Part shown: positions 10,549 through 62,830 of the stretch, piece by piece
Position numbering within the stretch: position 1 is the first letter of the stretch
Layout: every line of letters begins with the position of its first letter
DNA from: Ophelia neglecta
Lineage: Eukaryota
Direction of reading: 5' to 3'
Length of the DNA: 64,000 nucleotides
Assembly (NCBI GenBank): GCA_965285935.1
Contig: OZ260663.1
Span: forward strand, 66,898,001-66,962,000
The notes under the pieces: model-generated
What the model was told of the DNA's origin: nothing
The model's database searches: none
The model's input: the letters and a program-made list of their open reading frames with translations, nothing else
Program-made: the position numbers and the translations under genes

Positions 10549-13194
10549 CTACTCCGGTTCCTTCAGACACGCCGACTCGTAATGTTTGTTCAGATAAGAC
10601 TTGAGAGCAAACGACTTGTTGCACCTTTTACACTGATAGTGTTTGAAGGCGGAGTGGGTCTGCATGTGAGCCCGAAGGTTAGAGCGGTCAGCGAAGGCCT
10701 TGCCGCAGTGGGCACAGCCGTACGGCTTGTCACCCGAGTGGGAGCGAAGATGGCCCTGGAGCAACCATGGCCGCGAAAAGGATTTCCCGCAAAACGTACA
10801 GCAATGTTTGAGTTCGTGAGTGAGTAGATGCATGCTGAGGGCGGGCATGCTGACGTAGACTTTGCGGCAGTGGGGACATTTCTTGGCCTGCTGGGAGTCG
10901 AGACTTCGGTGGGTTTGTTTATGCCGGGAAAGGTTCGAGGAGGTGGCGTAGTGTTTGCCGCACTCACTACATGTAAACCGCTGTTTCTTGTCTTCAGTTT
11001 CTACCGGTTTCTTTCGTTTTTTAGAGCGTCCATCGCTGACTAAAAAGGCGTCGTATGTGTAGCCGACAGTGACGCTGTTCTCAAAGTTGGCGTCTGTTTT
11101 CTCAGTCTCGTCTGCCGTACAGAAGTCTTCGGTGGTGCTGGGAACTTCGGACTGCGTAGATGAGGGCGAGGTCGGGGCGCTGTTGGGCAAGGAAACGCTC
11201 TCAGCATCACTCTCGCTCTCTGCTTTGCCCTCCACTCGATGGTCCTGGCAGGGTGTCGGCCGGATCAGTTCACTGATGTAACCTGCAACAGAGAATAAAA
11301 TGGAGCATTGAGGCTCGTAGTCATGTAAGGGATTCAAAGGCACATTCCCTGAGGACCAATTTTCAACATGATTGGGCCTTACATGAAATGGGATTGATGC
11401 ACTGGGTGAGGTATTAGAAATAGTAGCCATTCGTGCACTTCAAAGTGTCAACTAACGGGCTTTGGTAACAGTAAATGAAGGCACAATAATGAAATATGTG
11501 TTCAATACCGCTGTGCTCAGCCAAGCTTCAAATCAGCGCAAGCCTTGGGTCAGGAGGTGGAAGGAAGGTGGGGGTGATTTACCGTAGCGGTAGGGAACGC
11601 AGGAGGGGAGCAGGTGGTCCGACCAGAAGGGCAACAGGTGATGGGAGAGAGATCTGCCGGCGGGCAGTGGCTTACTCCCCGGGCGCACCCGGCCTGCACC
11701 GCACTGTCTGTGGTACCCAAACAACCCCGGGGTCACTAACGGTCTCGATAAGCTCATCTGTACACTATTAGATGCAAGGGAGCAGGTGGGAAGCTGGACG
11801 ACACACAAAACATACCGATAAATGGGGTTTCTATTACACAACGGGCCCAGATATGACAGGCTGGTTACTGCTGTCGTCTGCCGACATTACCGTGTCATTG
11901 TCGAGAAAGGCACCGGTGGAGAAAGTTCCAGAAACGTGATACTGGACTCACCTTACCTTGTGCTCACCAGAGCTACAGGTGAGGCAGCTACCTGATGACT
12001 TTTTAATGAATTGATGAGTAACAAATTAGTCCACCTGAGCACTGCTCCTGCCTTTGTAGGTTGAGATTTCAAAGTGGCTGGCTCAATGTGAAATCAGAGA
12101 GAGAGGCTGGCTGCCACAAGAAACATGTGCACCCATTTCAATGGGGAGTCATTTGGCCAAGGGCGATTACAAATCTACCGTTAAGGCCCATGATTAATCG
12201 AATAAGTCACTAATCATTTGCCTTTCACCGGCTAGCCCATCGAGTTTTTCTTAATACTAGTGCTTAAGCCTACTTCCAGGTACGAAAATTGCATCGCTAT
12301 TCTGGTATGTAGCAAGAACACATAAATTGAGCAATTCTATAGCGCAGAACGCTGCCAAACACGGCATCTGGGGAGAATTTTGCATGCCAAGCGGCCATCA
12401 GTAGATCCTTACCCGTTCCTAAAGACAAGACAGTCAATGGACAAAGACTTACTGAAGCAACAGTCACCCTTCATACGCCCCGATTATTGCCTATGATTGG
12501 CCAATCTCGTCGGAATAAGCACAGAGAAATAGGACAAGATTTCCCGGCCAGGGCATTGTACTGGTCAGAAGCATCATTAGGGACTTTGATAGAACATTTA
12601 TGGCCCGGACTAAGCCTATTTGCCGTCAATATCTCTCCACTCGGCGCTCAGATGAAAGTTACTCCGAAACAAATCTAGCCGAACCTTCCACTCGCATTAA
12701 CAAATCGATACTAACTACTATGTACTTCAAAGGCGAGCCTCCCAAATGCGAACTCTAAATGTTTTCGAAAATAGGAATTTATATATTAGAGCCATTTCAA
12801 TTACTATCGCCACAGTGAGTCCATTCATTAAGACAAACCCTACCGCGTAGTCAAGTGGCAATTCCCTCATTCCCCCTCTTACTATTACATCCATTGACAA
12901 GAATGCCTAGCGTAGCTGGCAATTGCAGCAAATTACCTGGCAATGGTTCATTACGACCCATAAAAGCCTTTGATCCCCGATCATTACATGCAGTATGAGA
13001 ATGTAAATGGGGTACATACCGTTGCAGATTTTAACCGGAAGGGGCTGTGCCAAGTCCGGTGGGGTGTAGGGGGTGGCTGCATACTCAGTCACCGAGGGTG
13101 GTAGTCCCATGTCCCGAAAACACTTAGAGTAGGGACGGGAGGAGTAATCCTCCCCCCTTCTCTCGGCTTTCTTGATCAGAAATGACCGAGGCAT
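10549..13194 (-). CDS. scrt: Scratch-family (Snail superfamily) zinc-finger repressor, paralog A; complement(join(10549..11282,13020..13194)), 302 aa
   Basis: Exon 1 starts with the SNAG motif MPRSFLIKK (ATG at 13194) and ends AAC G|gtatgt. The acceptor ttttattctctgttgcag|GT TAC restores the frame (ICNG/YISE). Exon 2 encodes the Scratch domain GYTYDAFLVSDGRSKKR and five fingers, from [21 protein letters not shown] to [22 protein letters not shown] (last finger C2HC). 175+734=909 nt. Confidence 0.96.
11283..13019 (-). other. Phase-1 GT-AG intron of scrt-A (1737 nt)
   Basis: Donor GTATGT at 13019 and polypyrimidine tract plus CAG acceptor at 11283 on the minus strand; same position as the scrt-B intron. 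Confidence 0.93.
11611..12037. promoter_or_regulatory. Intronic CAGGTG E-box cluster, including a perfect Scratch consensus site
   Basis: CAGGTG/CACCTG at 11611, 11635, 11783, 11976 and 12032; GCAACAGGTG at 11631-11640. Confidence 0.6.
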
Positions 13195-13559
13195 CCTGCA
13201 AACACTCAAGTCCTGTGATTGTGCTACTGATAGCAGCAAAGGCAGTGGCAAGAAGGATTTTCACGCTGGTTTGTCAGATTCCTGACACTCCGCTGCCTTC
13301 CTGTAGCGCTATGAGTTATCCTCGGCAATCGGGAGTCTTTTGAAGGGCGCTGAAGTCTTTAGAGTGAGTCACGGAGAGCCACAAATAACGTGCTGAAGGC
13401 TGAGCTATTGATGTCGTCTGGTGGCGCGCTCCTCTCGCGCCAAACTGTTGCTTCCACAAGTCTGTTGCTGCCGACTGGTTGTGCCTGGTGTTCTCGGTAG
13501 CGTCAACACGGTCAACCATGTAGGCACGGAGGCGCAATCGGCTTTATGGACACACCCGT

Positions 13560-13890: not shown

Positions 13891-16800
13891 CTTGAGACCG
13901 GCTGAAGCATGGGGCACGCGCGGGCATTACATTATTGAGGCAGCCATCCGTACAGAGACTGATATCTAATACCATCGAAGCAGGCCCAGCGGCGGAGCCA
14001 GCTAGCGTAGCGTACACAATCCTACCAGGCCAGCTCGACAAATAGCTCTACTAGTCTCTCACTAGGCCTTCCCTGCCTGCTAGGCATTTCAATGCAAACA
14101 CACACCCGTTGGATCGATGGCACATCGACAACAGACAAGTCCCTTCCTAAATTCGCCACATGCTACTTTCCACGCAACTGGTACTACATAATAGTTGGGA
14201 GTACGGAAAGCCCACCGGTGGCCTCGTTCGCATGCAAACACCTCAAAGACATCTTAAAAAATCAAAAACGTACTGTCTTATTAGCGGTTTAGACAAAACG
14301 TCTGTTCTGAATGGCTGAGCCTTTGGGGAATATTTGCAAAAAAAGAAGCCTATGCCCTAGAGGTAAATGTGAAAAGAGATAAAGGCTTTGGCTCAGAATC
14401 CTGTTTAGGCTGAATCAAATTAAACGGAAGACGCAACAGGCTTTGCGGAGAAGCTTGCCTGGGAGACTGCCTCCTAGCGTCTGTATTTTACGTGTCTCAA
14501 TGAAAGACTCGCTCTTCTTGTCTCAGCAAGGCCAAAGCTCGCCTTTAATAAATGACATGATACCACACAGACGATAAACCTCGATATGTGTTTATCAAAA
14601 GATCTGCCCATAATTGGTTTCCACAAATCTCGTATCTCTCGGAAGCTCAGCGCTCGAGTGGCAAAGACGTCAGTGCGCGTGAACAGCAGACGACATCAGT
14701 CTTAATCCTGTCAGCGAAAAACGGGCGGATAATCAGAAAGGTCGCTTGGCGGAATCAGCAAGGAAAATAGAACGAAAATGATGTTAATGTCATAAAGAGC
14801 CGCCAGAGCTACCTTCACTCCTGGCAAGCTATGATATATTTGGATCTATCGATCTATGGCCGATGGAGCCTCAGTGCAAATGTTTGCCAATTTGGACCAG
14901 GAAAACTCCGTGGTTGTGGGCAGTACGAGAGAGAGTAAACGCTCTTAGCATGTCCTGCAAATTTTCCATGTTAAATTCCGTTGTTGATAGGCCTACGTGT
15001 TGCGTGTCAGGTCTTAAATTTCCAGGGAAAGTCAAAGCTAATCGACGACTGGCGCTCGCCGAAAATACAATTTTCTGCCATAGAGATTGTCCCCGTCAGA
15101 CATTTATTTTGACAGGTGGCAACTGTTGACAGCGGCCTGGCTCGCGTGATTCGCCGCTAATCTCGTCCTTCTCCGCCAAGTCCACTGACGAAGCTTGTTT
15201 CCTTGTTGCCTATCTCTGTAATTCTATAAAATGCTGGTAAATTGGTTGTCTTTCTTCATGTTTCCTTGCTGATACTTTCCACTTTGGCCCGAATGAAGGC
15301 ACGCGATCGCAGCCGGTTGCTTTGTAACCAGATTCCCAATGTGAGTATTAACCCTGACGGAGCTTCTCCCCTTTGCTGTCTCCCACATGCACCAGTCTAG
15401 TAAACGGCCCAGATTGCTTTCCCAGATATACAGTATTGATTTGGAAATGGATCGTCTTATCTTCATACTCAATTGAATTTCATATCCATTCAAAGTGAGC
15501 ATTTGTGCCGAATTTCCAGGAGCCGAGTTACGTGGCGGGCGCTGATGACTCAAGCCATATCAGAGCGATGTCGGCGATGTCAACTGTGGCGCTGTGCCAG
15601 GTGGTATAGGCCAAATCATCCCAACTCAATGGTGAAAAGATGAACTTTTACGACCACATTTCAATGATTTACTACACTCAGCTTAGCACTAAAAGCATGC
15701 TTGCCCTCTGTCTCCTTGTCTATTGTTTCCTCTGGCTATCTTCAGACGTGCATGTCCAATTGGCTTCACGTCAGACAACTCCCTCCTGCTACTTGCAAGT
15801 CGATATGTTAACCATGTTTTGGCCCGTTTTGTTGCTCTGATGGCCCTTTTATGGGCGACTTGGTTTCCTTTTACGTTTAGAATAAGTCGTGAATGGTATT
15901 CATAGTATTACAACATAAGATAACATTCAAAGATTCCAATTTTAGCAATGACATTATCGTCCATAGTTCAAACGGGGCAGCTATAGACAGAAAAACATTT
16001 TTAAACATTTACCATATCGTTCTTGTTGAGTTGCCAGGACCTATGAGGTGGGGTTGATCATGACTGAATCCGGCACTTTGATCAATATTTTTTTATGTAA
16101 GAGATTAAAGGTTTACACGGTACCCGTTCATCACGTTGCCCACCTGTTGGTTCAGCAGTGCTGAGCTCAAACCCAAATGTACGCCATGAATAATGAATGG
16201 GCGATTGTCTGGCCGTCTGAAATCCAAGACGGCACCACGAGAGATCAATGACGGAAGCTGGTATTTCGCCTGTAAATGGTCGGCCTATGTTCAGATTCAT
16301 GATGGAACTGTTTAAGTTGATGTACAAACAACTTGTCGGGCGTAGAAATCATTGTATGAGGGCGAAATAGAAGAGAATCAAATAGACTGCACTCATCAAA
16401 TATTCATACCCCCATTACGAATGCTAAGATCTGCTATGTTGACTGCCTCTAATGAAGGGAGGATGTGGGCAAACACGTGTATTTATACACGGAATTTCAG
16501 GTAATTTATTGCTGTTTCTGGGGACCGACTATAGGCAGAACTAGATTCTTTAGATAATCTGCTGTTTGGGCTAATGTCCAAATTCTAATCTAAGGTATTA
16601 GGAGACTTGTTATTCCCGAAATCAGGAATGGCAACCTTGTCAATGAGAATATAATCATACATAATGAAATCTGTCATCTTACTCAGGGGGATAATAAGTC
16701 ATCTCTGCTTCATACCTTTGATTATCAAATCATGGAAGAGGCTTTACTACCTATATAGACGGCTTTTGTCGAGGAGTTGGGCAAAACATGTACTATTCCA

Positions 16801-17322: not shown

Positions 17323-17491
17323 CACAGGGGTTCGTATCTGCAAGTTAAATTAATATTCATAAGGTAGCTCATTAATATATAGTGCTATAGCAGACGACTA
17401 CCAGTTATATTGGTAGTCGTCTGCTATAGCACTATATATTAATGAGCTACCTTATGAATATTAATTTAACTTGCAGATACGAACCCCTGTG
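17323..17491. mobile_element. Palindromic (foldback) MITE, 169 bp, with 8-bp target-site duplication; P- or hAT-superfamily-like
   Basis: Perfect 81-bp arms (17323-17403 and 17411-17491) around a 7-nt loop GTTATAT, flanked by the direct repeat GCTTGCTG (17315-17322 and 17492-17499). Termini are CACAGGGG...CCCCTGTG. Confidence 0.9.
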
Positions 17492-18977
17492 GCTTGCTGT
17501 AATAGTTCTAAATAACTTTTCCTCCTCATGCAGCTGTATGCAAATGGGCGTTGAGGCTAGTTAAGAATTAGTTATCTTTGACTAACCCCTTTGAACCAAA
17601 ATGGATAGTTAATTATAGTCTGTTAATTGCCCCAAAACATCCTAACGGTCCCACCTTGCACCTTGAGTTGAGTTGACAAGGTGCACTGTCAAGCAGTGTA
17701 TTCATTTAAAAAGTTGAAAAAAACCTTTTGAAGTGTTCATGGTTATTTCAATCACATCCTAACACCTTTCTTTGTCAAACACCCGCCATTTTGTAGCTTG
17801 TCGTGGAGGTGAACAGTTTAGAGGGCCATGAAAAGCAGATGACAGATGCTGGGCGATAATGGATATTCTAGGAACTCTGTTTAACTGCAGAACGCCTGTG
17901 TCATCATAGCATTTCTATACAGGCGGTCCCGCCCGACTGACTCTGGCACGCTACACCTGCCCTCTTACCAACTGTCGGTGATTCAAGTGCCCTTGTGAAG
18001 TCCTGCACGGGATGTTTATCCTCGATTTATACACACTTAAGACCATCAACGAATATTGATAATTAGCTTTCATTGTATGGTTGGTTATTTACGAATTTAA
18101 CAGCTAATCAAATCGGTCGTCTGATCGTACTGTCTGGTATGGTGGGCTATTTGAAGAACAATGCAGCAGATTTTGAGACTTTCCGATTGCATCAATACGA
18201 TGGTGATTGGCGTATCTGTGATTGAAATCTGGACATTGCATTTAACATTTGTGTGCATTCATCCAGCATGTCTATGGTTAACAGTTCATATTAAAACAAA
18301 GAACATGTTCGCCGACTTGATGCTTGGACAGAGGCGATGGAAAAGGACACGGTGAAAAATTCGACAACACAATGACAAGGGGTAGATACGGGGCATGCTA
18401 AGGAACTGACTCCATTTAAATTACAAAAGAAACTTTCCCCGACTGCATGTCTGTCTCTCCCAGGCTTATTAGTCCGAGTCGCGGGGTGTCCTCCGAGATA
18501 CTGGAGTCCCCGTATAATGAGAAGAAGGTGACACGAGTATAATAGACATTTTTGCCAGTCGAGCGTTTAATACAGTTAATATGATGGCCGATGCAGTGAT
18601 TTAGCGGTTGTGTAGCTGCCTGATAAGATTGTAACTATTGACCTGTTGAGTTGGTGGAATTGGAGGCCAATGCTCTCAAGGAGGGGGACATTTTCGCTTA
18701 AAATGGCAGTATCGTACCAATGACTTGTAAGAGCACCAGTCTGTTCAACTACCCTAGTGGACACACATGGTTATAACACAGCTTTCTTTCATGATAACAA
18801 AGAGCAGGTGTCGAAAACCGAGACTAGTTTCTTGGGGTGCCTGGAAGGACTGACACTGCAGTTATTCGTTGGTTCTAAGATTTTCGAAGAGAGGGGAGAG
18901 GATGACCTATCGTGGTGAGGGTGTGGGATGGGTTCCTGCCACAGAGGGGTGTCTTAATTTGTCCATAGGGTCCAGGA

Positions 18978-19084: not shown

Positions 19085-19141
19085 GCTTATGGGGGAAGTG
19101 GAAAAGGGCTCTCATACCACTCTGTCTAGAGACTCTCTGGA

Positions 19142-22300: not shown

Positions 22301-25300
22301 CTGAGCTTAAATCCATTCTTTGCATAGTGCACCCGTGATTTTGGGAAAATCAATTAATGTTTGCACTGAGCTCAAGCAATGCATCTTCATTTGCTTGTGG
22401 GTGCTTCTTTCCTTCTGAATATCAAATGAGTAATTTGAAACTTAATAAGAGAAGAAAAATGAGACGCATGCTAATTAGAGCGGGTGACTCATAACGATAT
22501 CATTATAGACATGCAAAGAACACCCACCCGTTTGGCGGAAAGACTTCCCTTTCGCTGCATTATAGGATGAATTTCGATTTTTTTAAACTGAAGAACGTCG
22601 ATATAGTCTTACAACAATTATAATGTTCGTCCAAATATTTCGAAGTTTATGGTTTTACTTTATATAGCCAGGTGATTTACATACAAAGTACCCTTGATTG
22701 TTTTCTACCTCAGCCTTATCGTTTACTTGATAAATGTTTTCCTAATCACCAAACACGGGATATTGTTCGTCTGGACAACTGTACATCAGTGGCTTTTATT
22801 AACAGACCTTCATGCAGTCCGTGTGGGCGGATGCAAATATATTGGTGACATGTCTAAATACCATCGTGTTACATACCTCATCATCCCATCTGAGTGGTAA
22901 TTGTTTTCTTTGTGTTGAAATTCTCGCGAGTTATGTTCCTAATGCTAGTTCATACTGGGGATCCATAAGCGCTGTGGAAGATCAAAATGTGTAATATGTG
23001 GATTTTTTTTTCTTTCGTTCTCATGTCTTCTCCGATGATTTGAGGAATGCATGCACCAGACTATCACCGGGTCAGTGAACAGGTGTTTGAAGGTCCTTGA
23101 GGACCTTCTCGCATGTCTGTACTACGGGCCTGGTCTTTGTCTGCAAGCTGCACTATGTCGCTTTGTCAAAATTCATTAACATTGCACTTTATTCTAATTA
23201 AGATCGAATTAACAGTATTTCCTTGCATATCTGTACCCATTGTCATCATCAGTGATGTAATGAACTCACGTGGAATTGGCAATGGGGTGACTTCCGAAAG
23301 AGTCCGTCAGCCATGCATTATTCATCGCCTCTAATTAGGAATACATATCACTGCGCCAAAGGAAGGGATAAATCATTGCGCGGCTCACCTGTTTGGAAAG
23401 TTGATGAAAAATGTCATCACCAGTGAAATTAATATGGGTCTTCTGAGGTTTAAATTGCCGCAAATTTATGGCTAGCAGCGACAGGGGCCATATTTCAGAT
23501 GACACATGAAGGATTCTCAGGCTTGAGAACAATAGAGCGATTGTGGACAAAAGCAATTTGGTTAAATCACGGGTTGAAGATGCAATAATCAGACAAATGC
23601 AGATGGAGAGGTTGGGGTTGAGAGTATAAATGTCGGCTGATAATGTGATGAGAAGGATGAGAAATAGGGGTGAGGGGCGGAAAATAACGTGACGTCACTC
23701 TATTAGACATCAGACGACAGGCCACGAAAACGAGTAAATTCAACTGCCCCAATGGCAAGACCATAGGTGACGAGGTCTTTAGGCCTATTCATCTAGCTGG
23801 ACAAGACAAAGGCAATTATTACACACACAATCAAACTGAAATAATTTGGCAATACATCTTACAGTTCTATATTGCACACCAATCTCGTCAATTCATTATC
23901 GGCAGGTGTTTCTCATTTTATAGAGAATTAAACCAATTCTTCCTGAGCAATGCTAACGGACTTGAACAGTAACGACTGTTATCAATTTAATGACATGAAC
24001 GCTATTCCCATTCACACCTCTAAAAAACAACTGAAAGCTTCTATTTTAGAGATCCTTTTTCCTTCCTAATCCTTTCGTAGAACAAGTCATTGACAAGGGG
24101 CGTAATTTATAAGCGTTCATTGCACTCAACACAGATTCCTTTTGGGTATTGCAAACTACCATGTAACAGATATCGTTTCTAAAATATTTCAAGCCGTGAC
24201 ATAGTCTGTTAACTCTGAGGGGCTGGTGTTGACTTCCCGCGTGACTTTTACTGGAGGTAAGTACAAAATGACCATCTGTCGGCAGGTCACAAAACACCCA
24301 TCCAGATAATTATCATATTAATGTTGTTCCCACACACTCTTTATTTCCAATTCTGGAGACTTCAACAGAAAATATATCCTCCATTTACGAAATACTGAAT
24401 CCAATGATAATCGATACCCTCACTGTCGGCAAGTTTTCTGATTGGCTGATATGATTTGATTCGTTGGTATGAATAGTGGTGTACTCGCATCGCATCATCA
24501 TGGAATAGGCCAAATGTCACATACACGACTAATATTGAAATCTTTGTACACTGTAGGTATATACATTGAAACAGCTATCATGGACCTTTTAATACCGATA
24601 CCAGATATTAGTTAGATTTCATGAGCAACAGCAACACTTATGCCAGGTAAAGATATGACATTGGAAATATCTCAAAAAAAGTTTGACATGTACAGTAAGA
24701 CTTTTTACAAAGGGTTACTGCGCCTGCGAGATTGACATGCATGTCATCACGTGGTTTGACCGAGACTCTCGGCTCAGCCTGTCGCCTAAATAAGAACACA
24801 CGAACTTTTTACTATCTGTTCGTAAACCTCGCGTCACTCGATCCATTACACAGTGCTCCTGAACATAGGTGTGCATGGGTCCGGGGGGTCGGGTCCAATT
24901 AACTAACTATCATAATGATAATTATAGGAAATGCCATGACTATATAAAAAGAAGATTGCGGAGGAACTCGCGAAAATGAAAAGTTTCACAATGTGGGAAA
25001 GCAAAGGCAATGTCGCTAAACTAAAACTGAATTCTACCCTGGTATCTCTCTTAGCTCTAAAATTTCTTTACCCACATTATAGACGCAATACCGCATTTAG
25101 ATATTAATTTGATAGGAAAACATTTTAACCGATAAAACCTGCCCGGTTTTTAAACTTAACAATTTTGTTTATCTTTCATTTCATTAAATCATCTGAAGTT
25201 CTGGACACACTGAACCAATGTGTCCAGAACTCCAGTTTCAAACAGACAAACAAACAAAAATACAGATTAGTTAATTTGTGCATTGTGTTTTTAATTATGT

Positions 25301-27631: not shown

Positions 27632-29271
27632 TACTTAGATATGGCGATGCTCTAAAATATAACATCATACACTACCATCAAACGTCCAAATATAAGACAA
27701 GGACTGTCTTATAGCACAATGACTTGTAGCAAGGAATATTCTGATAGCCTACCTAAAGTGAAGTAATCGGGCAAGTTGTAACACGGGAATGAAGCGAATA
27801 CACTGTATTACTTCATTATTATATCTGTAGACATTTCCTTTACTGTGTGTCTTTTGACTACAGGTTACTTATTTGTACCCCCCCCCCCCCCCCCCCTCCT
27901 CCTTCGCCATTTAATGGTTTGTCCCATGGATGCAAAGAGCTTCCGACGGTCGAGGTTTGTGATTATGGCTACTACAAAACTCTTAAAGGGATTCAATATC
28001 ACATAATAGTCACATGTATGCCTAAAAATCCCCATCCAAAACGTAAGCAAAACAAATATCGTAATCCGAGCTCAGTTTCTTATTGGTTCGCCTGCTTCGA
28101 TTTTTCTAGAATGTGCATGCTGTGGTAAATGGCACCCACCTTACTTATTACACCGGCGTCAAGAATACCTATAGATACCAGTCAATGACCATTTAGCTAA
28201 CAGGAGAAATCATATAGCATATTGATCGGCTGCTGCTTAGAAAGGTATTTGCCTCATGTATATATAGGAAGAATAAAATGTGCATTCCATTGACAGAAAA
28301 AGTTAAGGAGAGGAACAATGTTCTATTTGGAACGAATTGTTAAGTGCTGTCCAAAATCGAGTTTTTGTTAACTAAGGATATCCAAAAATTCTTCAAGGGG
28401 TAACTGGTGATATTTCCAGGGTAATTCTATGCGGTAATAGATTTTGCAATCGCCTGTCAAATGATTTGCTGATTAGTATATATAAGAAACTAGATACCCC
28501 CTGACCACACTATAATGTATCGCAACTTCGCGCAAATACGGACTCCATAAATATTGTATCACCTATGATATCTCCGGTTACGTTTGGCATAACGACGGAC
28601 GATCAATACGGTGACTGTTGCATCTGGCGGGCTTCTTGGGTCGTCTGCTTTTAAAACGCGCGCCTCCACGAATCAATCTCTCGCCAGATGATACCTTTTA
28701 GTTAATTTGGCTGATGGTATCATGTTCTAAGCCTGTATAGAGAAATGTCATAAGCCAATACTCTATAGATGTTAAAGTAAGTTACGGTCGTTAATATCAT
28801 CGAATAAGTTCAAGCAAAGAAATGACGGGCGCTAAGCTCGTTAGAGAGGGAATTACGGCGGGCTAAGAAGCAGATCACAGTAGAAATCTGCCTGTATGTT
28901 TTATAATTACTCAGGGAGATGTGTCGGAGGTGGTTTCAGTGGTCATGTTTACGAGGCGTTGAGCAGGACACCAGTTGCCGACTTATTCCCCACACCTTCA
29001 TCATATCGCCTGGGGCTCTCGACACCAAACTGCCTTTACAGACACCCGATCCGCCTCTATTGTCGCCTGAGAATGAAGCACCTGGTCCGGCAGAAATCTA
29101 CTCGGCACCATTCAAACACTGCAATATGGCAGAAAATGATTGCTGCTTTGCTAATCTCATTTCATTTTCATCAAGGATGACACATTGGTTTTAATCTGGT
29201 AGATTCCATATGGCTACTGGGTAAGCAGTAACGAGCTGTCTGAAGATGATGCTTTGTGGTCACGACACGCT

Positions 29272-49697: not shown

Positions 49698-52600
49698 AAG
49701 TTTCCATTGTTAATTTTGTAATAAAAATTTAAATGCAATCATCTGTTTGGAATTAGCAGGATTTTGGGGTTATTTTGGACGCTGGTGGGTTTGTATCCAC
49801 AGGAAGAGAATATTGTTATTATGCAAAGGTGCACACGTCTGGTGGTCGGCCAATTAGCACAAAAATACCATTAGAAGTGTGGGGCAGATGCCGTGTGGAG
49901 ATGTCGAGGCTTTCCGGCGGTTACGAGATGTCATCAAGTGAGGGGAGAGCACCCTCCTCCCCCTCTCTGGTCCTCTACCTCGCTCTCTTACACCACTCAC
50001 AGACCTTACCCCTCTCACGGAGTGCTCACCGGGGCTCATACTGACAAGCCCCTATGACTGTTGAACCTCCTCCAACAACTGGGGCAGTTTACAAGAAGAA
50101 ACAACAGGAAACATTGTATTTGAAGCCAAATGAGTTTCTTATAGAAATAGTTTCTTTCTTATGACAATAAGACAATGCACCCTTTCTTCCTCTGATTCTA
50201 CTAAGCAAATAATGAATTTGCAGTACTGTATTAATTGTTCTTAATTGGTCGGTGTATGCATTTGAAGTTATAATCTGATTTCAACTACAAATGTAAGCAG
50301 CAAATCGTTTATCCATGTTTACAGAATGCCCTGAAGCGGTCGGTAGCTTTACCAAGCCGTAATTGCATGCGACAAATTATTACAGTGTGTTAATTCCACT
50401 GTTAGTGGATGGTGCCCGAAAGTCAAGCCGATGGGACATATGGAGGTAGTGTTTCATGTTGTCATTAGCCTTAACCCGAAGGTGTCCAACCGTGCCAACT
50501 AATGACTGGTGCTCTCTTAGAAATTTTCAGGATCGCTGACTCCATTGGTCACAGGTATTGTTACTTTGATTGTGCATAATTTGGGTATTTTCGCTCCAAT
50601 TAAGTTGTTTTTGTTGCAGAGGAGAGCTCAGGGGCAAGGCAACCATCATCAAAGCAGACGACACGGTTGGTAGTCATTCACCCATCATGGCGCATGGACT
50701 GCTGGTGGCGGGAGCTTTAATAATGATGTAACCAACACTTCTTGCATGGCTGATTCAAATCTGAATTACCAAATATAAAATCTGTCATTGTATCTATATT
50801 CGGTAAATTTGGTTCATTAGAAGCCCTTCTCGACCTTTGTTGTGGCCTGTCCCTGTTGCCATGCAGTACCTCAGGAAGAACACCCTGGTAGAACATCGGC
50901 CCGTAGCTCTGTCGTGATTAACTGCCTCCAAGCATACCGTGACAAGGCGTCCACCCATTGCTCTTAGTATATTACAAGTAGTTGGTATTAAGTCATAAAT
51001 CAACGGGATGTGGTGTTATAAAGGATGACACTGTCTTTAACTTGTTATGTCTCAAGCTTTGTTGTCCAACCACGTTACACACCAGATGCGATGGGTGTGC
51101 ATTTTAACTGGGCCAGCTCGGTTTGATCACTCGACCAATTTGTCCCCCCGCCTCTGCTCATCCCCAGCCATCGAGACACACCCGCCACACAATGCCGGCC
51201 AGCGAGATGCCACAGGAGAACTCCTCCCCCTAACATGTTGTCCTATTGTCAACCAAGTGATTTATTTATCATATCAGACTTCCTCATTTTCGAGTTTAAA
51301 CAAAATGACAAAACTACTTTGCAGCCAACTTAGTATCATCTCGCCAGATGACTTACTGATCCGCTCGGCTAATTGGCATTCTAAATCAAATTTTCTGCCG
51401 AGGGTATCATATTATTCATATTATCGCTGGTATCAAAAGGTACCGGTTGAAAGTCGAATTCTTGTTAGTTATGATGTATTACCATCTAAGTGACTCTTTT
51501 CAATACAATCGCAACTCTCGCGGTCGAGACCTCGCTTGGAAAGATGGTGGGCCTAGCAATAAAATAATCCTTAGTAGTCTGTCATTTCGCTGTGATTTAA
51601 AGACAGTCTTATTAGGTTGATCATAATTAGGAGTCGGTGGACTATAGACCTCCAGTTATCTAAATAAATGAATGATTTTAGCGCTTATAATTCGCATCCT
51701 CGGTGATAATTGTGATAAATGCGACTCCCTTGGCGCTCAGCACTAATTCACGCTTGCATTCATCACACTGGTCAACACGCGAAAAGTTAGAAAACTCCTG
51801 AACTCGGTGGTTTGAAATAAATGATGAAGTGTGTTTGGGGAAAATTGAAGATTTTTTAGTTTTCTTTTGTTCTTTGTCTGTCCGGCTGTCGTCTGGTTGA
51901 CCAGGGGTCAACGCGCAGGCCAACCAGCCAAGCAGCGTCAACGATAAGCCATTGTGCGTGTCCAGTTGTCGTGGGTGCGGAACTGACCCTCGACTGGATC
52001 ACAACAGATCATAATAATCGGCTGGCCGCGATTAGATATGCATGGCTAAATATTCCATAGAGACATCGCTCAACCAGCATCACAATGCGATTATTCTCAG
52101 CCGTGATTAAAATATTCTTGAATGTGTCATAATCCATAAGTTTGACTCCCCGTTGTTCTTGATTCCTTTCACTTTTTATTGATTAGATTGATATTTTAAT
52201 ATCAACAGCATGCTAGCGAGACTTCCTAGCTATTAATTAAGTTTATAGAATATTTCCTGTATATGAAGCGTATCATAGATATATACCCTTTGTGAGAACA
52301 AGGGATTGAGTCAGTTCGAGACGCTAAATTGTGTGTCAGATCTGGCTAATGAAGAGATGACCAGATAGATGGACTAGACATTGTCTGGTTAGGTCTGGTT
52401 AGCTAACCGATCACTTCCTGCCAGACTGTCGTCTGCTGTGCAAACTTCCTGTCCTTCTCACTGGCACATCCCTTTTCGCGAAAGCCAGTTAGTAAATTAC
52501 AAGACAGAAGCCGGGCAAGCTTTCTTTGTCGAAGTCCATTTGGTAATGAACCGGTCATTTGTTAGCAAGTCAAAAGCAGTGTCACAATCAAGATATGTGT

Positions 52601-54195: not shown

Positions 54196-56069
54196 GCGGG
54201 AGATCAGGGTACGCATATATAACATACAACCTAAATTACCATTATTCCTAATACACCTAATAAAGGATATTATTTTGCCAATTTAAAATCTGAACAGTCA
54301 AATCTGTCCAATATTTTAATGAAGTTCTAAGTCTACATTCAGGTTTGGCCCCTTAAAAACGGACAATAAGTTGATCATGTGTTTTATAAAAGGTACACCT
54401 GTCCAAAGCTTTTTGTTCAATAACCGTTAATAGAGGGGAGGTTCGTCAAACCGAATGTTTACTTATTGAATGTTCCTAAATTACTGTTTAAATAATGGTT
54501 ATCCATTGTACTTCTTCTCTGTTCTATAAAATAAAGGTGTTATTTATAATTGAATGTGTATGGTCATATGTATATACACATCGTTATATGTTGGGTATTT
54601 GATAGGAGTACCTACCAGCGCTAGGCTCCTGTGTCCATCAGAAGGCCAGCTCTCGAGTTTCTTTGTCGGTATTCGCTTGTTTTGAGAGACCCACTTCTCT
54701 TTTGACTGGTACTGAGAGCCTTTCAGTTGACTTTTGATCATTTGTATAAATGCATAGGCTATTCAATATGCAATTGTTCCCATGCATTACTGGGCTTTTA
54801 GTCATAAGTATTGCTTAATTGAAAATATTCGCCACTTGGTCGCGTTATTGAGTGATATTGCATTAATCTAGAATCGGGGATATCCAAGGGCTTAGGGCAT
54901 CATTCGCTACTATTTAGTAGAAATTACCTTTTAAGTGTGGAGATTGGCTGAATGGAATCAACAGTGCCCTGCCTGCGAGAGGAATGTAGCGGGTAGCGAT
55001 CAACCGAGGTCCCTTCTATCGATCTGTCCAAACTCTGTCAATACCACGCCAGCTAGCAGCAGCCAAACGCTAAATCTACGTGTGTTTAGTGCCATTTCTA
55101 GATGTGGCACTTTTCAAAATGTTCATCAGTTTTTCCTTCTATGCATTTTGCAGTTTGTAGATTTGCTATATCCTTATAGTAGGCCCCTATTATTACATTC
55201 AAAGTTGGGTCAGTTCCCACTGCTTGTCCATAAGATGTTTGCATGTACTAAGACTTCTAACAATACATCATGCATGCATGCATGCATATCATCCAAACTT
55301 CACTCGGTTAGACATTGTAGGCCTATCTTTGAAAACTTTTCAACCAAAAATGCTCCTTGGATTTTTGACTGATGCTTTAATCTAGTCAGATTGTGGCTTT
55401 TCTCGAAAAGCCTTTATTATTCCCCTTTGCGAATAATCATGACATTAATTAAATGCTTTCTGAGTATCTTTTCAACCTCGGTTTTTGTGACACTTCAGCG
55501 GCTTCCCACAGAAAGCCTGGGTATTCGATTGTTGCAGTATTGTAACTCACGTCAACAAAATATTTCAATATCCCTTCTGAACCATGATTGCTTCGTGGAG
55601 CTTTTTGTTGGGTTTTGAGAGTATTGTGGGGGTGCTTCCGGTTTTGTCGGCGGTCGTAGCAAAATTGAAAAATAATTAACTGTATGGTGGACTGGCGTTT
55701 GGCCTGAGAGCTGGCAGTATTACTGAAAAGTGATTGTTATTGAGGCTGCACGTGGTCGTTTGCAAAAGGTCCGATTGGGGTCCAAAGATTCGTTTGTTTT
55801 GGCCTTCGCAGAAGACATGATACATTGGCAAGTGACAATTCTACACGGGTGCTCTAACACGTGTCCCAGTGTTGTCATTGTCTCTGGCTTTTCATTCATT
55901 GCAGGACTCCGAGATCACTCAATCATTTGGCAAACAGATTACGCGAGGAGTAATCTTTACGGCCAGTAGATTAATGCCCTTCCCGCGCGTCTCACTGGTC
56001 GATGGCTTTCCAACAGGCTCGCAGACGACAGTGGTTGGCGCTGGGGGCCGGGCTCCACGACAGGGAAAC

Positions 56070-56473: not shown

Positions 56474-58011
56474 ATGCCGCGCTCGTTCTTGATAAAAAAG
56501 AAGGGAAAGTCTGAGAAGAGGATAGATGAGATCATTCGAGCGTTTGCTAAGAAGGATATTCACGACAATGATAGTCGACCCGTGGTGACCGAGCCTGTCA
56601 TCTCGGCCGTGGCGCCCTTTACTCCGGCGATGGTACAGCCCATTCAACCCCTAGCAGTCAGACTCTGTAACGGTAAGAACTTTTAATTGCTATGATTGTT
56701 AACTGATCTCGTTACTGGTAGGCCTATCTGCGTTTAAAACGAGGGAAAATATGTTATGATAGTCAACTAAAGGTTTGTTTAATTGGAAACTTAAGACAGC
56801 CAGCGTGCTTTGAATCATTTTTTTGTTCCTATTCATGTGTGATTAAATGGAGGAACCTATAGGGCCTACAATCATTTATTTTATGATGAAATGTGTAAGA
56901 TTTTGTAACGAAGTGTTTACCAACTATATATTTTTACTTCACTTAAAACAGTCGATGGACGATATCCGCTTTATTGCATTAATGCACATTTTTTTATACA
57001 AATATCATATCAAGTTGATCGGTGATTCCATTTACCAAAGCTTTCATTTTTTTTTTGCAAAAGAACAATGACTTATATGTCCTTGTATCTAATGTAGTTA
57101 CCTTCCCCTCAAAGACGGTCTAAAGTTTACATTGCGCATGCACGGGTTGTACTTTCCCCAAAAGAAAGTCAGAAATTGATATTTATCTTTGGTTTATTTC
57201 AGGCTACATTCATGACGTACTCTCGGCTTTTCCGTACTTTGAGCCCCGGGCCTACAGCACGTCGCCCATTAAGAAAGAAACTCCGGAGGAGGAGGCCCGT
57301 TACCGACATACCCCCTCCAGGGACCCCATTCCCGCCGAGAAGAGGGAAATCCCGAGTCCGACTAGTTCCACTCTCAGCTGCCGCTCGGACAAGTCGTCGG
57401 CCGTCGGCTCGCCTCTGTCGCCCTCGTCGACAGGGTCAGCCCGAAAACCGACCGGCTTTCAAGAGGGTATCACCGTCGGTTACACGTATGACGCTTTCTT
57501 CGTGAGCGATGGTCGCTCGCGGAAGCGGAACCCGCTGGGGCTCCCCGACCCCATCAGACAGCGCTACACGTGTAACGAGTGCGGCAAACACTACGCAACT
57601 TCCTCGAACCTCTCCCGACATAAACAAACCCACCGAAGTCTCGACTCACAGCAGGCCAAGAAATGTCCCCACTGCGGCAAAGTGTACGTCAGCATGCCCG
57701 CCCTCAGCATGCACATCCTCACCCACAACCTGAGACACGAGTGTGCAGCATGCGGCAAGTCCTTCTCTCGACCATGGCTTCTCCAGGGGCACATGAGGTC
57801 CCACTCGGGCGAAAAGCCCTACGGCTGTGCCCACTGCGGCAAAGCCTTCGCCGACCGCTCGAACCTCCGGGCTCACATGCAGACCCACTCCGCCTTCAAA
57901 CATTATAAGTGTAAGAGATGTGACAAATCGTTCGCCCTCAAGTCGTACCTTAACAAGCATTACGAGTCGGCGTGTCTCAAGGATGACGGGATCATCGACG
58001 TAGTGGCCTGA
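56474..58011 (+). CDS. scrt: Scratch-family zinc-finger repressor, paralog B; join(56474..56672,57203..58011), 335 aa
   Basis: [13 protein letters not shown] at ATG 56474 (A at -3). Donor AAC G|gtaaga and acceptor tttatttcag|GC TAC give LCNG/YIHD. Exon 2 is open through [17 protein letters not shown] and five Scratch-type fingers to TGA at 58011. 199+809=1008 nt. Confidence 0.96.
56673..57202 (+). other. Phase-1 GT-AG intron of scrt-B (530 nt)
   Basis: GTAAGA donor at 56673 and TTTATTTCAG acceptor ending at 57202; the join keeps the reading frame. Confidence 0.93.
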
Positions 58012-59960: not shown

Positions 59961-62503
59961 AAGTACTTAGTAGTCATCTTCCCTTCCATCTTTTTCTTTG
60001 AATTAACCAGAAAATTAATAATATTATTCCAGAATCAAATTAGATAATAATCAATGAACTTTTACGTGCCTATTTCCTTGTGCTGCACCGTCCCTTTTTG
60101 TTAATGACTTAAACTTATAATTAAGAATCAAAGTCCACAGATTAAATTGTGGAAAAAAACTTTACAACCAAAGATTGTTCAATTTTGATTCATTTCCCAA
60201 TAAAGCTGAATCGTTAATTACTTAATACTAGAATGAACTGCTTTGTTTGAGCCACGCTCCGTGGTGTGAAGTATTGACACAGTAAATACGAGCTGAGGAG
60301 GTGTTGAAACGCACACTTGTACAAGCTCAGAGATGAGCATTCCCTTGATGTTCGTGGGAGGTCCCCAATGGCAGATCGGCAAGTCAACAGCTTAGGGGTC
60401 AAATACAGAACACCATCAAAACCTGACATCAAGTACAGATTTATGTGATTGGTTATTATTGCTGCCGAACTAAACTTATTATTATGAATCACCAACGCCT
60501 GAATTTGAATGCCACCATTTCCCTCCGAAGACTCATCAGAGTATTCGGAAGCAGTCATAAACGTGGACCCGTCTGATTTGTCTTTAACATTTGCTTATCC
60601 AGTCACGAGGGATAACTATTGTTTATGTTTATAACCTGTCCCTCGCTGAACTTGTGTCTACATGTTGCTGATTAATAAATCAGTCATTATAAATCTCTGC
60701 TGAAATTGTCCAGTTAGTAGATCTTTCTCCACTGCTTGTCGTGAAATCCCACGAGAATGGAGACGTGTCTCTAACACGGCGTCAATGCTTAGCAGGAGGC
60801 GGTTAACAGCAGACGACACTCTTATTAAAGTGAAGTAGAGTGTTGTATTACGTTAACCAGGACTCTATGATGAGCCATCTGTTGACGAGTTTCCCTAGTC
60901 AAACTATTACCGTGATTACCCTCTACAGTCAACACTACCAGAGGCTAAAGTGGCCATTACGTGAGCAATTTACGATTAATTTCAATTTGTTGCCCAGTTT
61001 TTTCTTCTTAGTTGTTTTGTCAAGCCCGTAGAAAATCTTTGTGTATAAGCAGCACCTGCAAGCATTTCTGTTTTTTTTCTTGAGATATTTAGCTTACTCT
61101 AACTTTTATGAATTTATTGTTGCTGCAAATCCATCGAAGGCAAATCACAACGTCTTTGTTACAATCAAGCTGATTGATCCCTTTAAACATGAAAAATCAT
61201 TTCCGGTTCGCTTTTCAAATCTGACATTGATAACTCATAGGAATTTTACAGAAGGAAATGTGAATTTTAAACAAGGGCTCCTAGTTTTCCCTCGGGGTGG
61301 GAGAATGAGTCATTGTCCTCTAGAAGACAGGCTAATCGTTTTACATCTTCAATGTACTATCGCAATGCTCCATTCTTAGTTTTCAAACAATAGAAAACCC
61401 AATTAATGGTCACATGAGAGATTACTTCACCGCTTCACAATCAGTTCTCGTAAATAATGAGACTCAGCGAATGATTGCCAGGTCTCCAATGTTGTCCATC
61501 TGAATCATTTTTATTCGTTTCTTTCAACTTTGTAATCTAATATGGCATAGAATTCAGTAGATTCCCCAACAGTATTGTTCCAGTCACCTGCTTGATTAGG
61601 AACCCAATTGAAATGTGCATATTCAGATCATCTGGTGATTAGAGGCGCTGCGGGTTTAATACGAGTTTCTATCATTGGGTGACTAATGCAGGGATGGCCC
61701 GCCACAATCAACATGTATTTGACTCAATGTCACTGATTGGAATAAACCTCTAAATTGAAAATAAAGATCTCCTTGTAACATAATCTGTCTGGCAATTGCC
61801 AGTCGCCTAAGATAGCTTATGTCACAAATCCGAAAGGTTTTTACACTAACCGAGAAACGATACGAGACCAAATGAGGCAAGTAAATCGGAGTGGAACCTG
61901 CACCTAATTCATTACATAAATCCTTCTAACAAATTGGCCAAGGGAGAGGATTCGTCAGAAGACCAAAGCAATTTAGACTTAGTCCCTTATAGAGTATGTA
62001 GATTAAAAATAGGACTTCCGAGGACGAAATGACTAAAAACTGATAATTGGAGAGTATTCGTGTTGATTAAGTAGAAAGCTCATCCGCATAATCAACTGTC
62101 AGTCTCCTCTGTTTAGAAATTGTGTAAATAAAGAAGCAACATCCCGAAAAAGAAGCTTCATGAGACGATGGAGTTTTTTGGAACATATGTTAACTTCGTA
62201 TAGATATAGGGTTACTTCATTGAACTTTGGATATGTTTTGCTTAAATATAAGACATGTTATCCAGTTTGATACCAAGTTTGTGGATTAATGATTCAATGC
62301 AAATAATTACTGACATATTTCTATATCATATTGTTATCTATATCATAATCTGGGAATAGTATAGTCTTATACTCGTCTCTGGTATAATTGCACGAATTTA
62401 GCTTGGTAAACAAATATTGAATATGCTTATAAAAAGCCTATCTATTTTGGGTATTTGCTGCCAAATGGCCCCCAAGAGGAAGAGTGGGCAACTATCCGAC
62501 CAG

Positions 62504-62830
62504 AGGTCACCAGTGGAACACTGTGGAGAGCTCTTCAATTGTTTAGTGCATTGTTTATGAGTTGACCATTGAAAAGGCCGTAAACCTTAGTGGCTTTTTA
62601 TCAGTTGTCCGGCAGCCAGATGGCTCGGAAGAGGTCGGAAAATGACCTGTGACCTTGAACATGTCATGAACTGTCCCTGAAAAGTGTGACCTTTAACCGG
62701 GGGCCGTCTGGGTTCTCCACAATGTCCATTATTCGAGGGCGACATCTTCAGTTGGGTGTCGTCTGCACTGTGACCTTGTGATTTATGGTCAAGGGCACGT
62801 GTACAACATCGGTCAACTTTTTGTTGACCT
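62504..62830. promoter_or_regulatory. Cluster of nuclear-receptor half-sites, including a perfect DR1
   Basis: AGGTCA/TGACCT at 62504, 62643, 62650, 62687, 62771 and 62825; TGACCTgTGACCT at 62643-62655. Confidence 0.4.

What the first reader, a model, noticed from the sequence alone, without database searches (positions are those of the whole stretch)
11872..62766. Unexplained dispersed 10-mer TGTCGTCTGC across the whole locus
Seen: exact TGTCGTCTGC/GCAGACGACA at 11872, 14686, 30358, 36453, 44840, 45275, 48870, 50654, 52427, 56021, 60809 and 62757 (12 copies, both orientations). One-mismatch copies occur at 13412, 17390, 17415, 23710, 28639 and 51887. About 0.1 exact copy is expected from composition, and the word contains a CpG. 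The flanks are unrelated, so these are not simply fragments of one repeat. Copies sit in the scrt-A intron and leader, upstream of both promoters and beside the nuclear-receptor cluster. I recognise no factor with this consensus (only the GTCTG part resembles a Smad box). Inference: the binding site of an uncharacterised, possibly methylation-sensitive, sequence-specific protein marking regulatory DNA. The palindromic MITE carries the core in both arms and could be a vehicle for spreading it.
Basis: partly seen in the sequence, partly recalled or inferred. Interest (0 to 1): 0.8.

Follow-up and report, generated by a model that had tools for sequence, protein, structure and literature searches.

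The report
Orphan DNA word marking developmental genes
A sharply defined 10-12 base DNA word, (T)RTCGTCTGC(T), is scattered every 3-4 kb through the regulatory domain of two head-to-head scratch zinc-finger genes; it is not part of a repeat, is missing from the neighbouring unmethylated non-developmental genes, and turns up again at the scratch locus of a nemertean, a brachiopod and an annelid, so it is most likely the docking site of an old, still unidentified DNA-binding protein that works on developmental-gene domains.

Summary
TGTCGTCTGC occurs 12 times at the stated coordinates, against 0.08 expected. The core GTCGTCTG occurs 20 times. Flanks are no more alike than random DNA, and the word is the top 10-mer of the non-repeated part of the window.

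Genome-wide there are 7,634 copies, against 312 and 376 for two matched one-CpG control words. The copies are clustered, and the window holds about 19 times the genome mean.

The dense zone runs from about 4 to 80 kb in window coordinates and matches the domain of the two divergent scratch genes. An adjacent 56-kb domain with equally high CpG content, holding Na/Pi-cotransporter genes, has no copies. Low methylation alone therefore does not explain the word. Thirty homeobox loci are about 10-fold enriched.

New here:
- The word recurs in non-alignable non-coding DNA at the scratch locus of Lineus, Lingula and Paralvinella.
- I found none in Tubulanus, Owenia, Pecten or Capitella (Hox3 locus), and one 8-mer copy in Haliotis.

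The palindromic MITE is a real hAT-like family, but it cannot account for the copies.

Best reading: a selected binding site of an unidentified sequence-specific protein, either architectural/tethering or a shared enhancer factor. The protein itself is inferred.

The scan had already noted this word at other developmental loci of this genome.

The parts
4782..4789 (-). core copy GTCGTCTG (CGTCGTCTGT), downstream of scratch-A
10549..13194 (-). scratch-A gene. Exon 1 starts at 13194 with the SNAG peptide MPRSFLIKK. The zinc-finger exon ORF is 10549-11430.
11872..11881 (+). exact 10-mer, in the scratch-A intron
13412..13421 (+). core copy (TGTCGTCTGG), 219 bp upstream of the scratch-A ATG
14686..14695 (-). 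exact 10-mer, 1.5 kb upstream of scratch-A
17326..17490 (.). perfect palindromic MITE with AGTCGTCTGCT in both arms (cores at 17391 on - and 17416 on +). It is flanked by the 8-bp direct duplication GCTTGCTG, which is hAT-like. The family has at least 40 copies in the genome.
18116..18123 (+). core copy (GGTCGTCTGA)
23710..23719 (-). core copy (TGTCGTCTGA)
28639..28648 (+). core copy (GGTCGTCTGC)
30358..30367 (+). exact 10-mer, intergenic
36453..36462 (-). exact 10-mer, intergenic
44840..44849 (-). exact 10-mer, intergenic
45275..45284 (+). exact 10-mer, intergenic
48870..48879 (-). exact 10-mer, intergenic
50654..50663 (-). exact 10-mer, intergenic
51887..51896 (+). core copy (TGTCGTCTGG)
52427..52436 (+). 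exact 10-mer, intergenic
56021..56030 (-). exact 10-mer, 444 bp upstream of the scratch-B ATG
56474..58011 (+). scratch-B gene. The SNAG exon starts at 56474 (MPRSFLIKK). The zinc-finger exon ends at 58011.
60809..60818 (-). exact 10-mer, downstream of scratch-B
62757..62766 (+). exact 10-mer, downstream of scratch-B

Best explanation
The word (T)RTCGTCTGC(T), here mostly TGTCGTCTGC(T), is a cis-regulatory recognition site kept by selection. An unidentified protein of high sequence specificity binds it on double-stranded DNA; the sites show no strand preference. That specificity fits a multi-zinc-finger or BED-type protein.

The sites are spread at about one per 3-4 kb through the whole regulatory domain of developmental regulator genes. 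Here that domain belongs to the head-to-head scratch-A/scratch-B pair, and each gene also has a copy within 0.5 kb upstream of its start codon.

The likeliest job is domain-wide. One option is tethering or looping of the many regulatory elements of such a locus. The other is acting as a shared licensing or memory factor (pioneer-like, or Polycomb/Trithorax-recruiting) at each element. The kept CpG suggests that binding needs the site unmethylated.

Shown:
- the excess
- unrelated flanks
- sharpness of the word
- confinement to the domain
- independence from low methylation alone
- enrichment at homeobox loci
- recurrence in three other phyla or lineages

Inferred: that a protein binds the word, which protein it is, and what binding does.
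For: Excess:
- 12 exact copies against 0.08 expected in the window.
- 7,634 copies genome-wide against 312 and 376 for two matched one-CpG permuted words, about 22-fold.

Not a repeat:
- Flanks of 48 copies are no more alike than controls.
- It is the top 10-mer of non-repeated DNA.

Sharpness and the kept CpG:
- Single-mismatch variants reach at most 2 copies each.
- The CG form (7,634) outnumbers the CA, TG and TA forms together (6,993) in a CpG-depleted genome.

Domain limits:
- 21 core copies lie between 4 and 80 kb.
- None lies in the adjacent 56-kb domain of CpG o/e 0.76-0.85 that holds two Na/Pi-cotransporter genes.
- Few lie in the flanking stretches of low CpG o/e.

Clustering: 46% of the first 100 copies on C1 have a neighbour within 20 kb, against 18% at random.

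Other developmental loci: 10 exact copies in 95 kb around 30 homeoboxes, about 10 times the genome mean.

No strand bias: 3,942 forward and 3,692 reverse.

Other phyla:
- The pre-specified 10-mer occurs 6 times against 0.28 expected over nine foreign loci. Lineus has 3, Lingula 2 and Paralvinella 1.
- The 8-mer TCGTCTGC occurs 5, 7 and 4 times in Lingula, Paralvinella and Lineus, against nulls of 0.41, 0.62 and 0.70.
- Only coding exons align between these loci and the window. The word is therefore kept while the sites turn over, as expected of binding sites.

Precedents:
- Lineage-specific motifs at loop anchors around developmental genes in annelids (bioRxiv 10.64898/2026.05.18.725834).
- CTEP1/2 zinc-finger proteins binding an unmethylated motif at ctenophore loop anchors (PMC12221973).
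Against: - There is no direct evidence of binding, accessibility, methylation state or chromatin contacts. Only the assembly's own DNA runs hold this stretch.
- No known factor's motif fits.
- The evidence from other species rests on one locus of 20-30 kb per species. Five species show nothing or a single 8-mer copy, so conservation is patchy.
- No partner motif was found. There is only a mild rise in GC and CpG within 50 bp, and the CGCG-type words are borderline after correction.
- An exact word repeated this faithfully is unusual for ordinary transcription-factor sites, which are normally degenerate.
Confidence: 0.7

Rival explanations
1. Smad-type response element: the GTCTG/CAGAC part is a Smad-binding element, and the longer word is a composite site for Smads plus a partner. 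On this reading the word marks BMP/TGF-beta target genes.
For: - The word contains CGTCTG, which holds the GTCT/AGAC Smad box.
- GACGAC fits the Mad consensus GRCGNC when read on the other strand.
- Many developmental regulators are BMP targets.
Against: - A Smad box is 4-5 bp and degenerate. Here 9-10 bases are fixed.
- The Drosophila silencer arrangement GRCGNC-N5-GTCTG occurs in 0 of 48 copies.
- Sites every 3-4 kb over whole domains of very different genes (scratch, Hox, NK, Pax6 by earlier notes) do not look like signal-response elements.
Confidence: 0.08
2. Transposon relics: the copies are worn-down remains or footprints of a mobile element such as the palindromic MITE, and have no function of their own.
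For: - The MITE at 17326-17490 carries the core in both arms.
- It is a real family with an 8-bp target duplication.
- In placozoans a loop-anchor motif lies in Mutator terminal repeats (PMC12221973).
Against: - Flanks of the other copies are unrelated to the MITE and to each other.
- The MITE has A, not T, before the core, so it adds nothing to the 7,634 exact copies.
- The first look found about 100 candidate MITE sites.
- Relics would leave many decayed variants, and these are missing.
- The dense domains are poor in repeats.
- The same word occurs in three other phyla without alignable flanks.
Confidence: 0.03
3. By-product of composition, low methylation or a context-dependent mutation or gene-conversion bias in developmental domains, with no factor involved.
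For: - The dense domain has high CpG o/e (0.7-0.9), so CpG words survive there.
- Flanks within 50 bp are slightly richer in GC and CpG.
Against: - The neighbouring domain with equal CpG o/e has 0 copies in 56 kb, where about 15 would be expected at the domain's density.
- Permuted one-CpG words average 0.1 in the window.
- Those control words total 312-376 genome-wide.
- A mutation bias would not yield the same word in a nemertean, a brachiopod and an annelid.
Confidence: 0.04
4. The word acts at the RNA level, or as a DNA signal for something other than transcription control, for example a replication-origin or recombination-hotspot word.
For: None directly. Dispersed exact words can mark origins or hotspots in other systems (general knowledge).
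Against: - There is no strand bias genome-wide, in the window, or relative to the genes, which argues against an RNA element.
- Hotspot words erode quickly and are not expected to be shared between phyla.
- Confinement to developmental-gene domains is not expected of origins.
Confidence: 0.05

Closest known systems
CTEP1/CTEP2 sites at ctenophore loop anchors, and the unnamed species-specific motif at Capitella teleta loop anchors and TAD boundaries
   Same: - Each is a lineage-restricted, high-information motif with no match in motif databases.
- Each is concentrated in the regulatory landscapes of developmental and transcription-factor genes.
- The CTEP motif contains CpG and is bound only when unmethylated (PMC12221973; bioRxiv 10.64898/2026.05.18.725834).
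   Different: - No chromatin-contact, binding or methylation data exist here.
- The published motif sequences are only in figures, so I could not compare them.
- This word is shared by several phyla rather than confined to one species.
- I found none at the Capitella and Owenia loci I could test.
Zelda TAGteam word (CAGGTAG) and GAGA-factor sites in Drosophila (from established knowledge, not tested here)
   Same: Each is a sharp short word in both orientations with unrelated flanks. Each is strewn through the enhancers and promoters of patterning genes and is far rarer elsewhere.
   Different: - The sequence is different and contains a CpG.
- The factor is unknown.
- The animal is a lophotrochozoan with mosaic methylation.
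- Timing and activity are unknown.
BED-finger sites: human ZBED1/hDREF hDRE TGTCG(C/T)GA(C/T)A, Drosophila DREF TATCGATA, BEAF-32 CGATA
   Same: - The 5' half TRTCG(Y) is the same as the half-site of the hDRE and DRE (PMC7471704).
- Both G and A variants are used here.
- BED fingers come from hAT transposases, and the local MITE that carries the core has a hAT-like 8-bp target duplication.
   Different: - The 3' half is TCTGC, not GAYA.
- The central TCG(C/T)GA said to be needed for ZBED1 binding is absent.
- hDRE and DRE sit at promoters of housekeeping and proliferation genes, the opposite distribution.
- The shared part is only 5-6 bases, so this is a lead and not an assignment.
Smad-binding element and the Drosophila BMP silencer element GRCGNC(N5)GTCTG
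   Same: The word contains GTCTG.
   Different: 9-10 bases are fixed instead of 4-5. The silencer arrangement occurs in 0 of 48 copies.
PROX1/Prospero site YAAGACGYCTTA (recalled from memory)
   Same: Shares AGACG/CGTCT.
   Different: That site is a palindrome with AAG, not CAG, and the flanks do not fit. Not tested.

Membership tests
Dispersed repeat or MITE relic | Copies align to a common consensus beyond the word | tested here: not met
   Flanks of 48 copies score like random controls (mean 15.5 against 15.5). Only two overlapping inverted pairs score high.
Dispersed repeat or MITE relic | Copy number of the carrier element can account for the copies of the word | tested here: not met
   The first look found about 100 MITE candidates and scored 40. 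They carry AGTCGTCTGC, not the exact 10-mer, which has 7,634 copies.
Smad/BMP response element (Drosophila silencer type) | GRCGNC placed 5 nt from GTCTG | tested here: not met
   0 of 48 copies.
Smad/BMP response element (Drosophila silencer type) | GTCT/AGAC core | tested here: met
   The word contains GTCTG.
ZBED1/DREF (hDRE/DRE) site | Central TCG(C/T)GA within TGTCG(C/T)GA(C/T)A | tested here: not met
   The word reads TGTCGTCTGC. Only TGTCGT is shared.
ZBED1/DREF (hDRE/DRE) site | Location at promoters of housekeeping or proliferation genes | tested here: not met
   The sites blanket a developmental-gene domain and homeobox loci.
CTCF-type boundary site | Concentration at the edges of domains rather than inside them | tested here: not met
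   Copies are spread through the whole 4-80 kb domain. Chromatin contacts could not be tested. The CTCF consensus, recalled from memory, shares no run with this word.
Lineage-specific tethering or architectural protein site (CTEP-like) | CpG-containing motif that lies in unmethylated DNA | tested here: inconclusive
   The sites lie in DNA of CpG o/e 0.7-0.9, and the CpG form dominates its decay variants. CpG o/e is only a proxy for methylation.
Lineage-specific tethering or architectural protein site (CTEP-like) | Sites coincide with loop anchors and are bound by a zinc-finger protein | not testable with these tools
   No Hi-C, ATAC or binding data could be reached.
Selected transcription-factor binding site (general) | The word is kept across species while the surrounding sequence is not | tested here: met
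   Lineus, Lingula and Paralvinella carry significant excesses. Only coding exons align.
Selected transcription-factor binding site (general) | Enrichment is tied to a class of genes, not to base composition | tested here: met
   Matched control words were used. The adjacent unmethylated transporter domain has 0 copies. Homeobox loci are 10-fold enriched.

The most novel reading that the evidence does not exclude
The word is the docking site of an ancient architectural or chromatin-memory factor that arose at or before the split of nemerteans, brachiopods and annelids. The factor may be a domesticated hAT/BED-finger protein. It would bind only unmethylated sites and knit each developmental-gene landscape into one regulatory domain. 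That would make it a lophotrochozoan counterpart of CTCF, GAGA factor or CTEP, later replaced in some lineages (Owenia by YY1-like sites, Capitella by its own motif).
Probability: 0.3. Interest if true: 0.85.

Novelty: new member of a known kind. Interest (0 to 1): 0.68.

Why it matters
How invertebrates other than flies define and hold together the large regulatory domains of developmental genes is an open question. Recent work finds lineage-specific motifs at loop anchors, mostly without a known protein.

This word has features that make the question directly testable:
- It has about 20 bits of information.
- The genome holds roughly 12,000 motif-type sites, by a rough estimate.
- It picks out developmental loci and ignores neighbouring unmethylated effector genes.
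- It is shared between phyla.

The word can be used in three ways:
- to predict developmental regulatory domains from sequence alone
- as a bait to fish out the protein
- to compare lineages that keep it with lineages that seem to have lost it

Tried and rejected
- **Literature search for the word.** Searching the letter strings found only primers and probes.
- **Sequencing runs.** Only the assembly's own DNA runs hold the stretch, with no RNA, ATAC or bisulfite data.
- **Effector-gene control.** The adjacent Na/Pi-cotransporter domain served as the control instead.
- **Second foreign locus.** The Lineus and Lingula Hox3 proteins found were minor isoforms and not on record. One scratch relative had no DNA available. 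Look-ups were then exhausted.
- **Non-coding alignment.** Between the window and seven foreign scratch loci, and between the home locus and an ENA relative's Hox3 locus, only coding exons align.
- **Partner motif within 60 bp.** Nothing was convincing; the CGCG-type words are borderline.
- **The tool's built-in reversed-word control.** It is inflated because CGTCTGCTGT overlaps the extended motif, so I replaced it with a permuted word.
- **The ORF at 43073-44173.** It lies inside a 96-bp satellite and is spurious.
- **Assignments rejected.** I rejected the MITE-vehicle reading, the Drosophila BMP silencer arrangement and membership in the ZBED1/DREF site family. CTCF, YY1/Pho, Zic, Maf/CRE, HINFP and PROX1 were compared only from memory and none fits.
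Full report
**1. The observation**

The expectation is 0.08, and no shuffle out of 100 reaches 12. Two more core copies lie at 4782 and 18116, giving 20 in all.

The flanks are visibly unrelated. After masking everything repeated in the window (7% of it), the word is still the most frequent 10-mer. No single-mismatch variant has more than two copies. 300 permuted words with the same letters and one CpG average 0.1 copies, with a maximum of 3. From 48 core copies (window, flanks and homeobox loci) the consensus is T-GTCGTCTG-C-T, with nothing conserved further out.

**2. Is it a repeat?**

Local alignment of the +-100 bp flanks of those 48 copies gives the same score distribution as random segments (mean 15.5 in both). 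Only two pairs score high, and they are overlapping inverted pairs.

- It is a perfect palindrome at 17326-17490, flanked by the 8-bp direct duplication GCTTGCTG. That is the target-duplication length typical of hAT elements (the hAT assignment is an inference).
- It is a true family with at least 40 copies scored out of about 100 candidates.
- It carries AGTCGTCTGCT, not the exact 10-mer, and its numbers are trivial against the genome's total.

**3. Genome-wide picture**

The genome is 762 Mb, and the window is C5:66,898,001-66,962,000.
- The exact word occurs 7,634 times, evenly on both strands. That is 0.64 per 64 kb on average, so the window holds about 19 times the mean.
- The tool's reversed-word control (1,675) is inflated, because the reversed word overlaps the extended motif.
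- A clean permuted one-CpG word and its reverse give 312 and 376 copies, so the genome-wide excess is about 22-fold.
- The CpG form is more frequent than the CA, TG and TA forms together (7,634 against 6,993). That is striking in a genome where much DNA has CpG o/e of 0.2-0.35.
- The core 8-mer occurs 25,213 times. In the enriched regions 54% of cores carry the T..C flanks, against about 6% expected by chance. From that, roughly 12,000-13,000 cores are of the motif type. This is a rough inference.
- The A variant TATCGTCTGC occurs 2,085 times, a modest excess.
- Among the first 100 copies on contig C1, 46% have a neighbour within 20 kb, against 18% at random. No simulation out of 2,000 reaches 46%.

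**4. What the dense zone corresponds to**

The window holds two Snail/Scratch-type zinc-finger genes. They lie head to head.
- Scratch-A is on the minus strand. Its SNAG exon starts at 13194 (MPRSFLIKK) and its zinc-finger exon is at 10549-11430.
- Scratch-B is on the plus strand. Its SNAG exon starts at 56474 and its zinc-finger exon ends at 58011.
- One copy of the word lies 219 bp upstream of the scratch-A start codon and another lies 444 bp upstream of the scratch-B start codon. The rest are spread through the 43-kb shared intergenic region, the scratch-A intron and the DNA downstream of both genes.

I fetched 100 kb on each side of the window. Across the 264 kb:
- 21 core copies fall between window positions 4 kb and 80 kb.
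- Only 6 fall in the other 188 kb.
- The zone is bounded by stretches of CpG o/e 0.2-0.35, which probably are methylated gene bodies.

The key control is a second stretch of high CpG o/e (0.76-0.85) at -92 to -36 kb. It holds two Na/Pi-cotransporter genes and has no copy at all in 56 kb. About 15 would be expected there at the scratch domain's density. The word is therefore not a side effect of unmethylated DNA. It goes with the developmental-gene domain.

As an independent test, 30 loci of 3.2 kb around the best homeobox matches of the genome hold 20 cores and 10 exact words in 95 kb. That is about 10 times the genome mean.

**5. Other species (new here)**

The scratch-A protein has no close relative in the protein collection. 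Its best hits are about 60% identical, from a nemertean, molluscs, a brachiopod and annelids. The home species is thus a lophotrochozoan of uncertain position.

I fetched the scratch locus with 10-kb flanks from seven species, plus a Hox3 locus from Capitella and from an unnamed ENA relative.

Pre-specified exact 10-mer:

| Species | Locus size | Observed | Null mean |
|---|---|---|---|
| Lineus longissimus | 31 kb | 3 | 0.058 |
| Lingula anatina | 29 kb | 2 | 0.029 |
| Paralvinella palmiformis | 22.6 kb | 1 | 0.039 |
| Other six loci | – | 0 | – |
| All nine loci | – | 6 | 0.28 |

In Lineus and in Lingula, 1 of 2,204 permuted words reaches the observed count.

Following that lead, the 8-mer TCGTCTGC gives:

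| Species | Observed | Null mean |
|---|---|---|
| Lingula | 5 | 0.41 |
| Paralvinella | 7 | 0.62 |
| Lineus | 4 | 0.70 |
| Tubulanus | 0 | 0.47 |
| Owenia | 0 | 0.26 |
| Pecten | 0 | 0.30 |
| Capitella | 0 | 0.41 |
| Haliotis | 1 | 0.38 |
| ENA relative | 1 | 0.29 |

In Lingula and Paralvinella no permuted word out of 299 reaches the observed count.

In the positive species the sites gather upstream of the gene:
- Four lie within 5 kb upstream in Lingula.
- Five lie within 630 bp, about 2 kb upstream, in Paralvinella.
- One lies 48 bp from the annotated gene start in Lineus.

Apart from the coding exons nothing aligns between these loci and the window. The word is kept while individual sites come and go, which is the usual behaviour of binding sites under selection.

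Caveats:
- Only one locus per species was tested.
- The 8-mer test is partly post hoc.
- A zero count in 20-30 kb is weak evidence of absence.

**6. What it is not**

- The BMP silencer arrangement GRCGNC-N5-GTCTG occurs in none of 48 copies. The GTCTG part alone is too short to explain 9-10 fixed bases.
- The human ZBED1 site is TGTCG(C/T)GA(C/T)A and the Drosophila DREF site is TATCGATA (PMC7471704). They share the half TRTCG(Y) with the word, and both G and A variants are used here. The other half differs, though, and those factors work at housekeeping promoters. A BED-finger protein is therefore a lead, not an assignment. The hAT-like MITE carrying the core fits that lead only loosely.
- No strand bias exists, which argues against an RNA element.
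- No partner motif was found. GC and CpG are slightly raised within 50 bp.

**7. How it most likely works**

The best reading is that an unidentified protein of high sequence specificity binds the word on unmethylated DNA at many points of each developmental-gene landscape.

Two versions fit the spread of one site per 3-4 kb plus promoter-proximal copies:
- A tethering or architectural factor that pulls the regulatory elements of a locus together.
- A factor shared by most enhancers of such genes, either pioneer-like or recruiting Polycomb/Trithorax memory complexes.

I cannot separate the two without chromatin data.

Recent work gives close precedents:
- In annelids, loop anchors and TAD boundaries are enriched around transcription-factor genes. 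They carry a YY1-like motif in Owenia and an unidentified species-specific motif in Capitella (bioRxiv 10.64898/2026.05.18.725834).
- In a ctenophore, two lineage-specific zinc-finger proteins bind an unmethylated motif at loop anchors (PMC12221973).

I found none of the present word at the Owenia and Capitella loci. That would fit those lineages using other motifs, but this is inference from small samples.

**8. Relation to earlier notes of this scan**

The same word had already been noted in other windows of this genome, around NK1, Pax6, POU3, GATA, coe, BMP3 and engrailed genes. Two follow-ups reached the reading 'unidentified DNA-binding protein marking developmental domains'.

I re-tested the homeobox enrichment and the R variant myself. 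This report adds:
- the control with the adjacent unmethylated domain
- clean matched control words
- the typing of the MITE
- the recurrence in three other lineages

**9. Verdict**

The feature is real, non-repetitive and strongly non-random. It is a new, orphan member of a known kind: a high-information binding word that marks developmental regulatory domains. The binding protein and its action remain inferred.

Noticed in passing
window 1115-56726 (11 copies) and throughout the 264-kb view: The palindromic 8-mer TAGGCCTA, often ATAGGCCTAC, has unrelated flanks and about 40 copies in 264 kb, against about 3 expected from composition. Unlike the main word it is spread evenly and is not limited to the scratch domain. 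From memory it resembles the vertebrate ZFX/ZNF711 site AGGCCTAG.
   Followed up: partly
window 41272-44222: A 96-bp satellite with 31 copies, 95% alike, sits inside the scratch intergenic region in a block of lower CpG o/e (0.44). The 366-aa ORF at 43073-44173 lies inside it and is spurious.
   Followed up: yes
window 17326-17490: A perfect 165-bp palindromic MITE with the 8-bp target duplication GCTTGCTG, which is hAT-like. It has at least 40 near-identical copies on many contigs, including half-length copies that are 100% identical.
   Followed up: partly
L002:8760-9812 and L003/L004 junction (window -81 kb and -70 kb): Two tandem genes with a Na+/Pi-cotransporter domain lie in an unmethylated-looking 56-kb domain that wholly lacks the word.
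   Followed up: partly
G000:C1:3512985-3531364: Seven exact copies of the word lie on the minus strand, spaced 1.9-3.9 kb apart. This could be a tandem gene array or another dense domain.
   Followed up: no
G000:C1:3290393-3290426, C1:6580423-6580445, C1:18984837-18984864, C1:20506279-20506308: The word also occurs in short tandem or near-tandem arrays 12-20 bp apart. Close pairs 40-100 bp apart occur in L048 (915/1011), Paralvinella (L057 8323/8369) and Lingula (L054 5300/5343). This hints at homotypic clustering.
   Followed up: no
L052 1-2011 and L054 1-3501: A NUDIX_2-domain gene lies just upstream of scratch in both the nemertean Tubulanus and the brachiopod Lingula, which may be conserved microsynteny.
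   Followed up: no
G000:C1:34206952-34243668: Four copies of the A variant TATCGTCTGC cluster within 37 kb, next to two NK1-type homeoboxes (L028, L038).
   Followed up: partly
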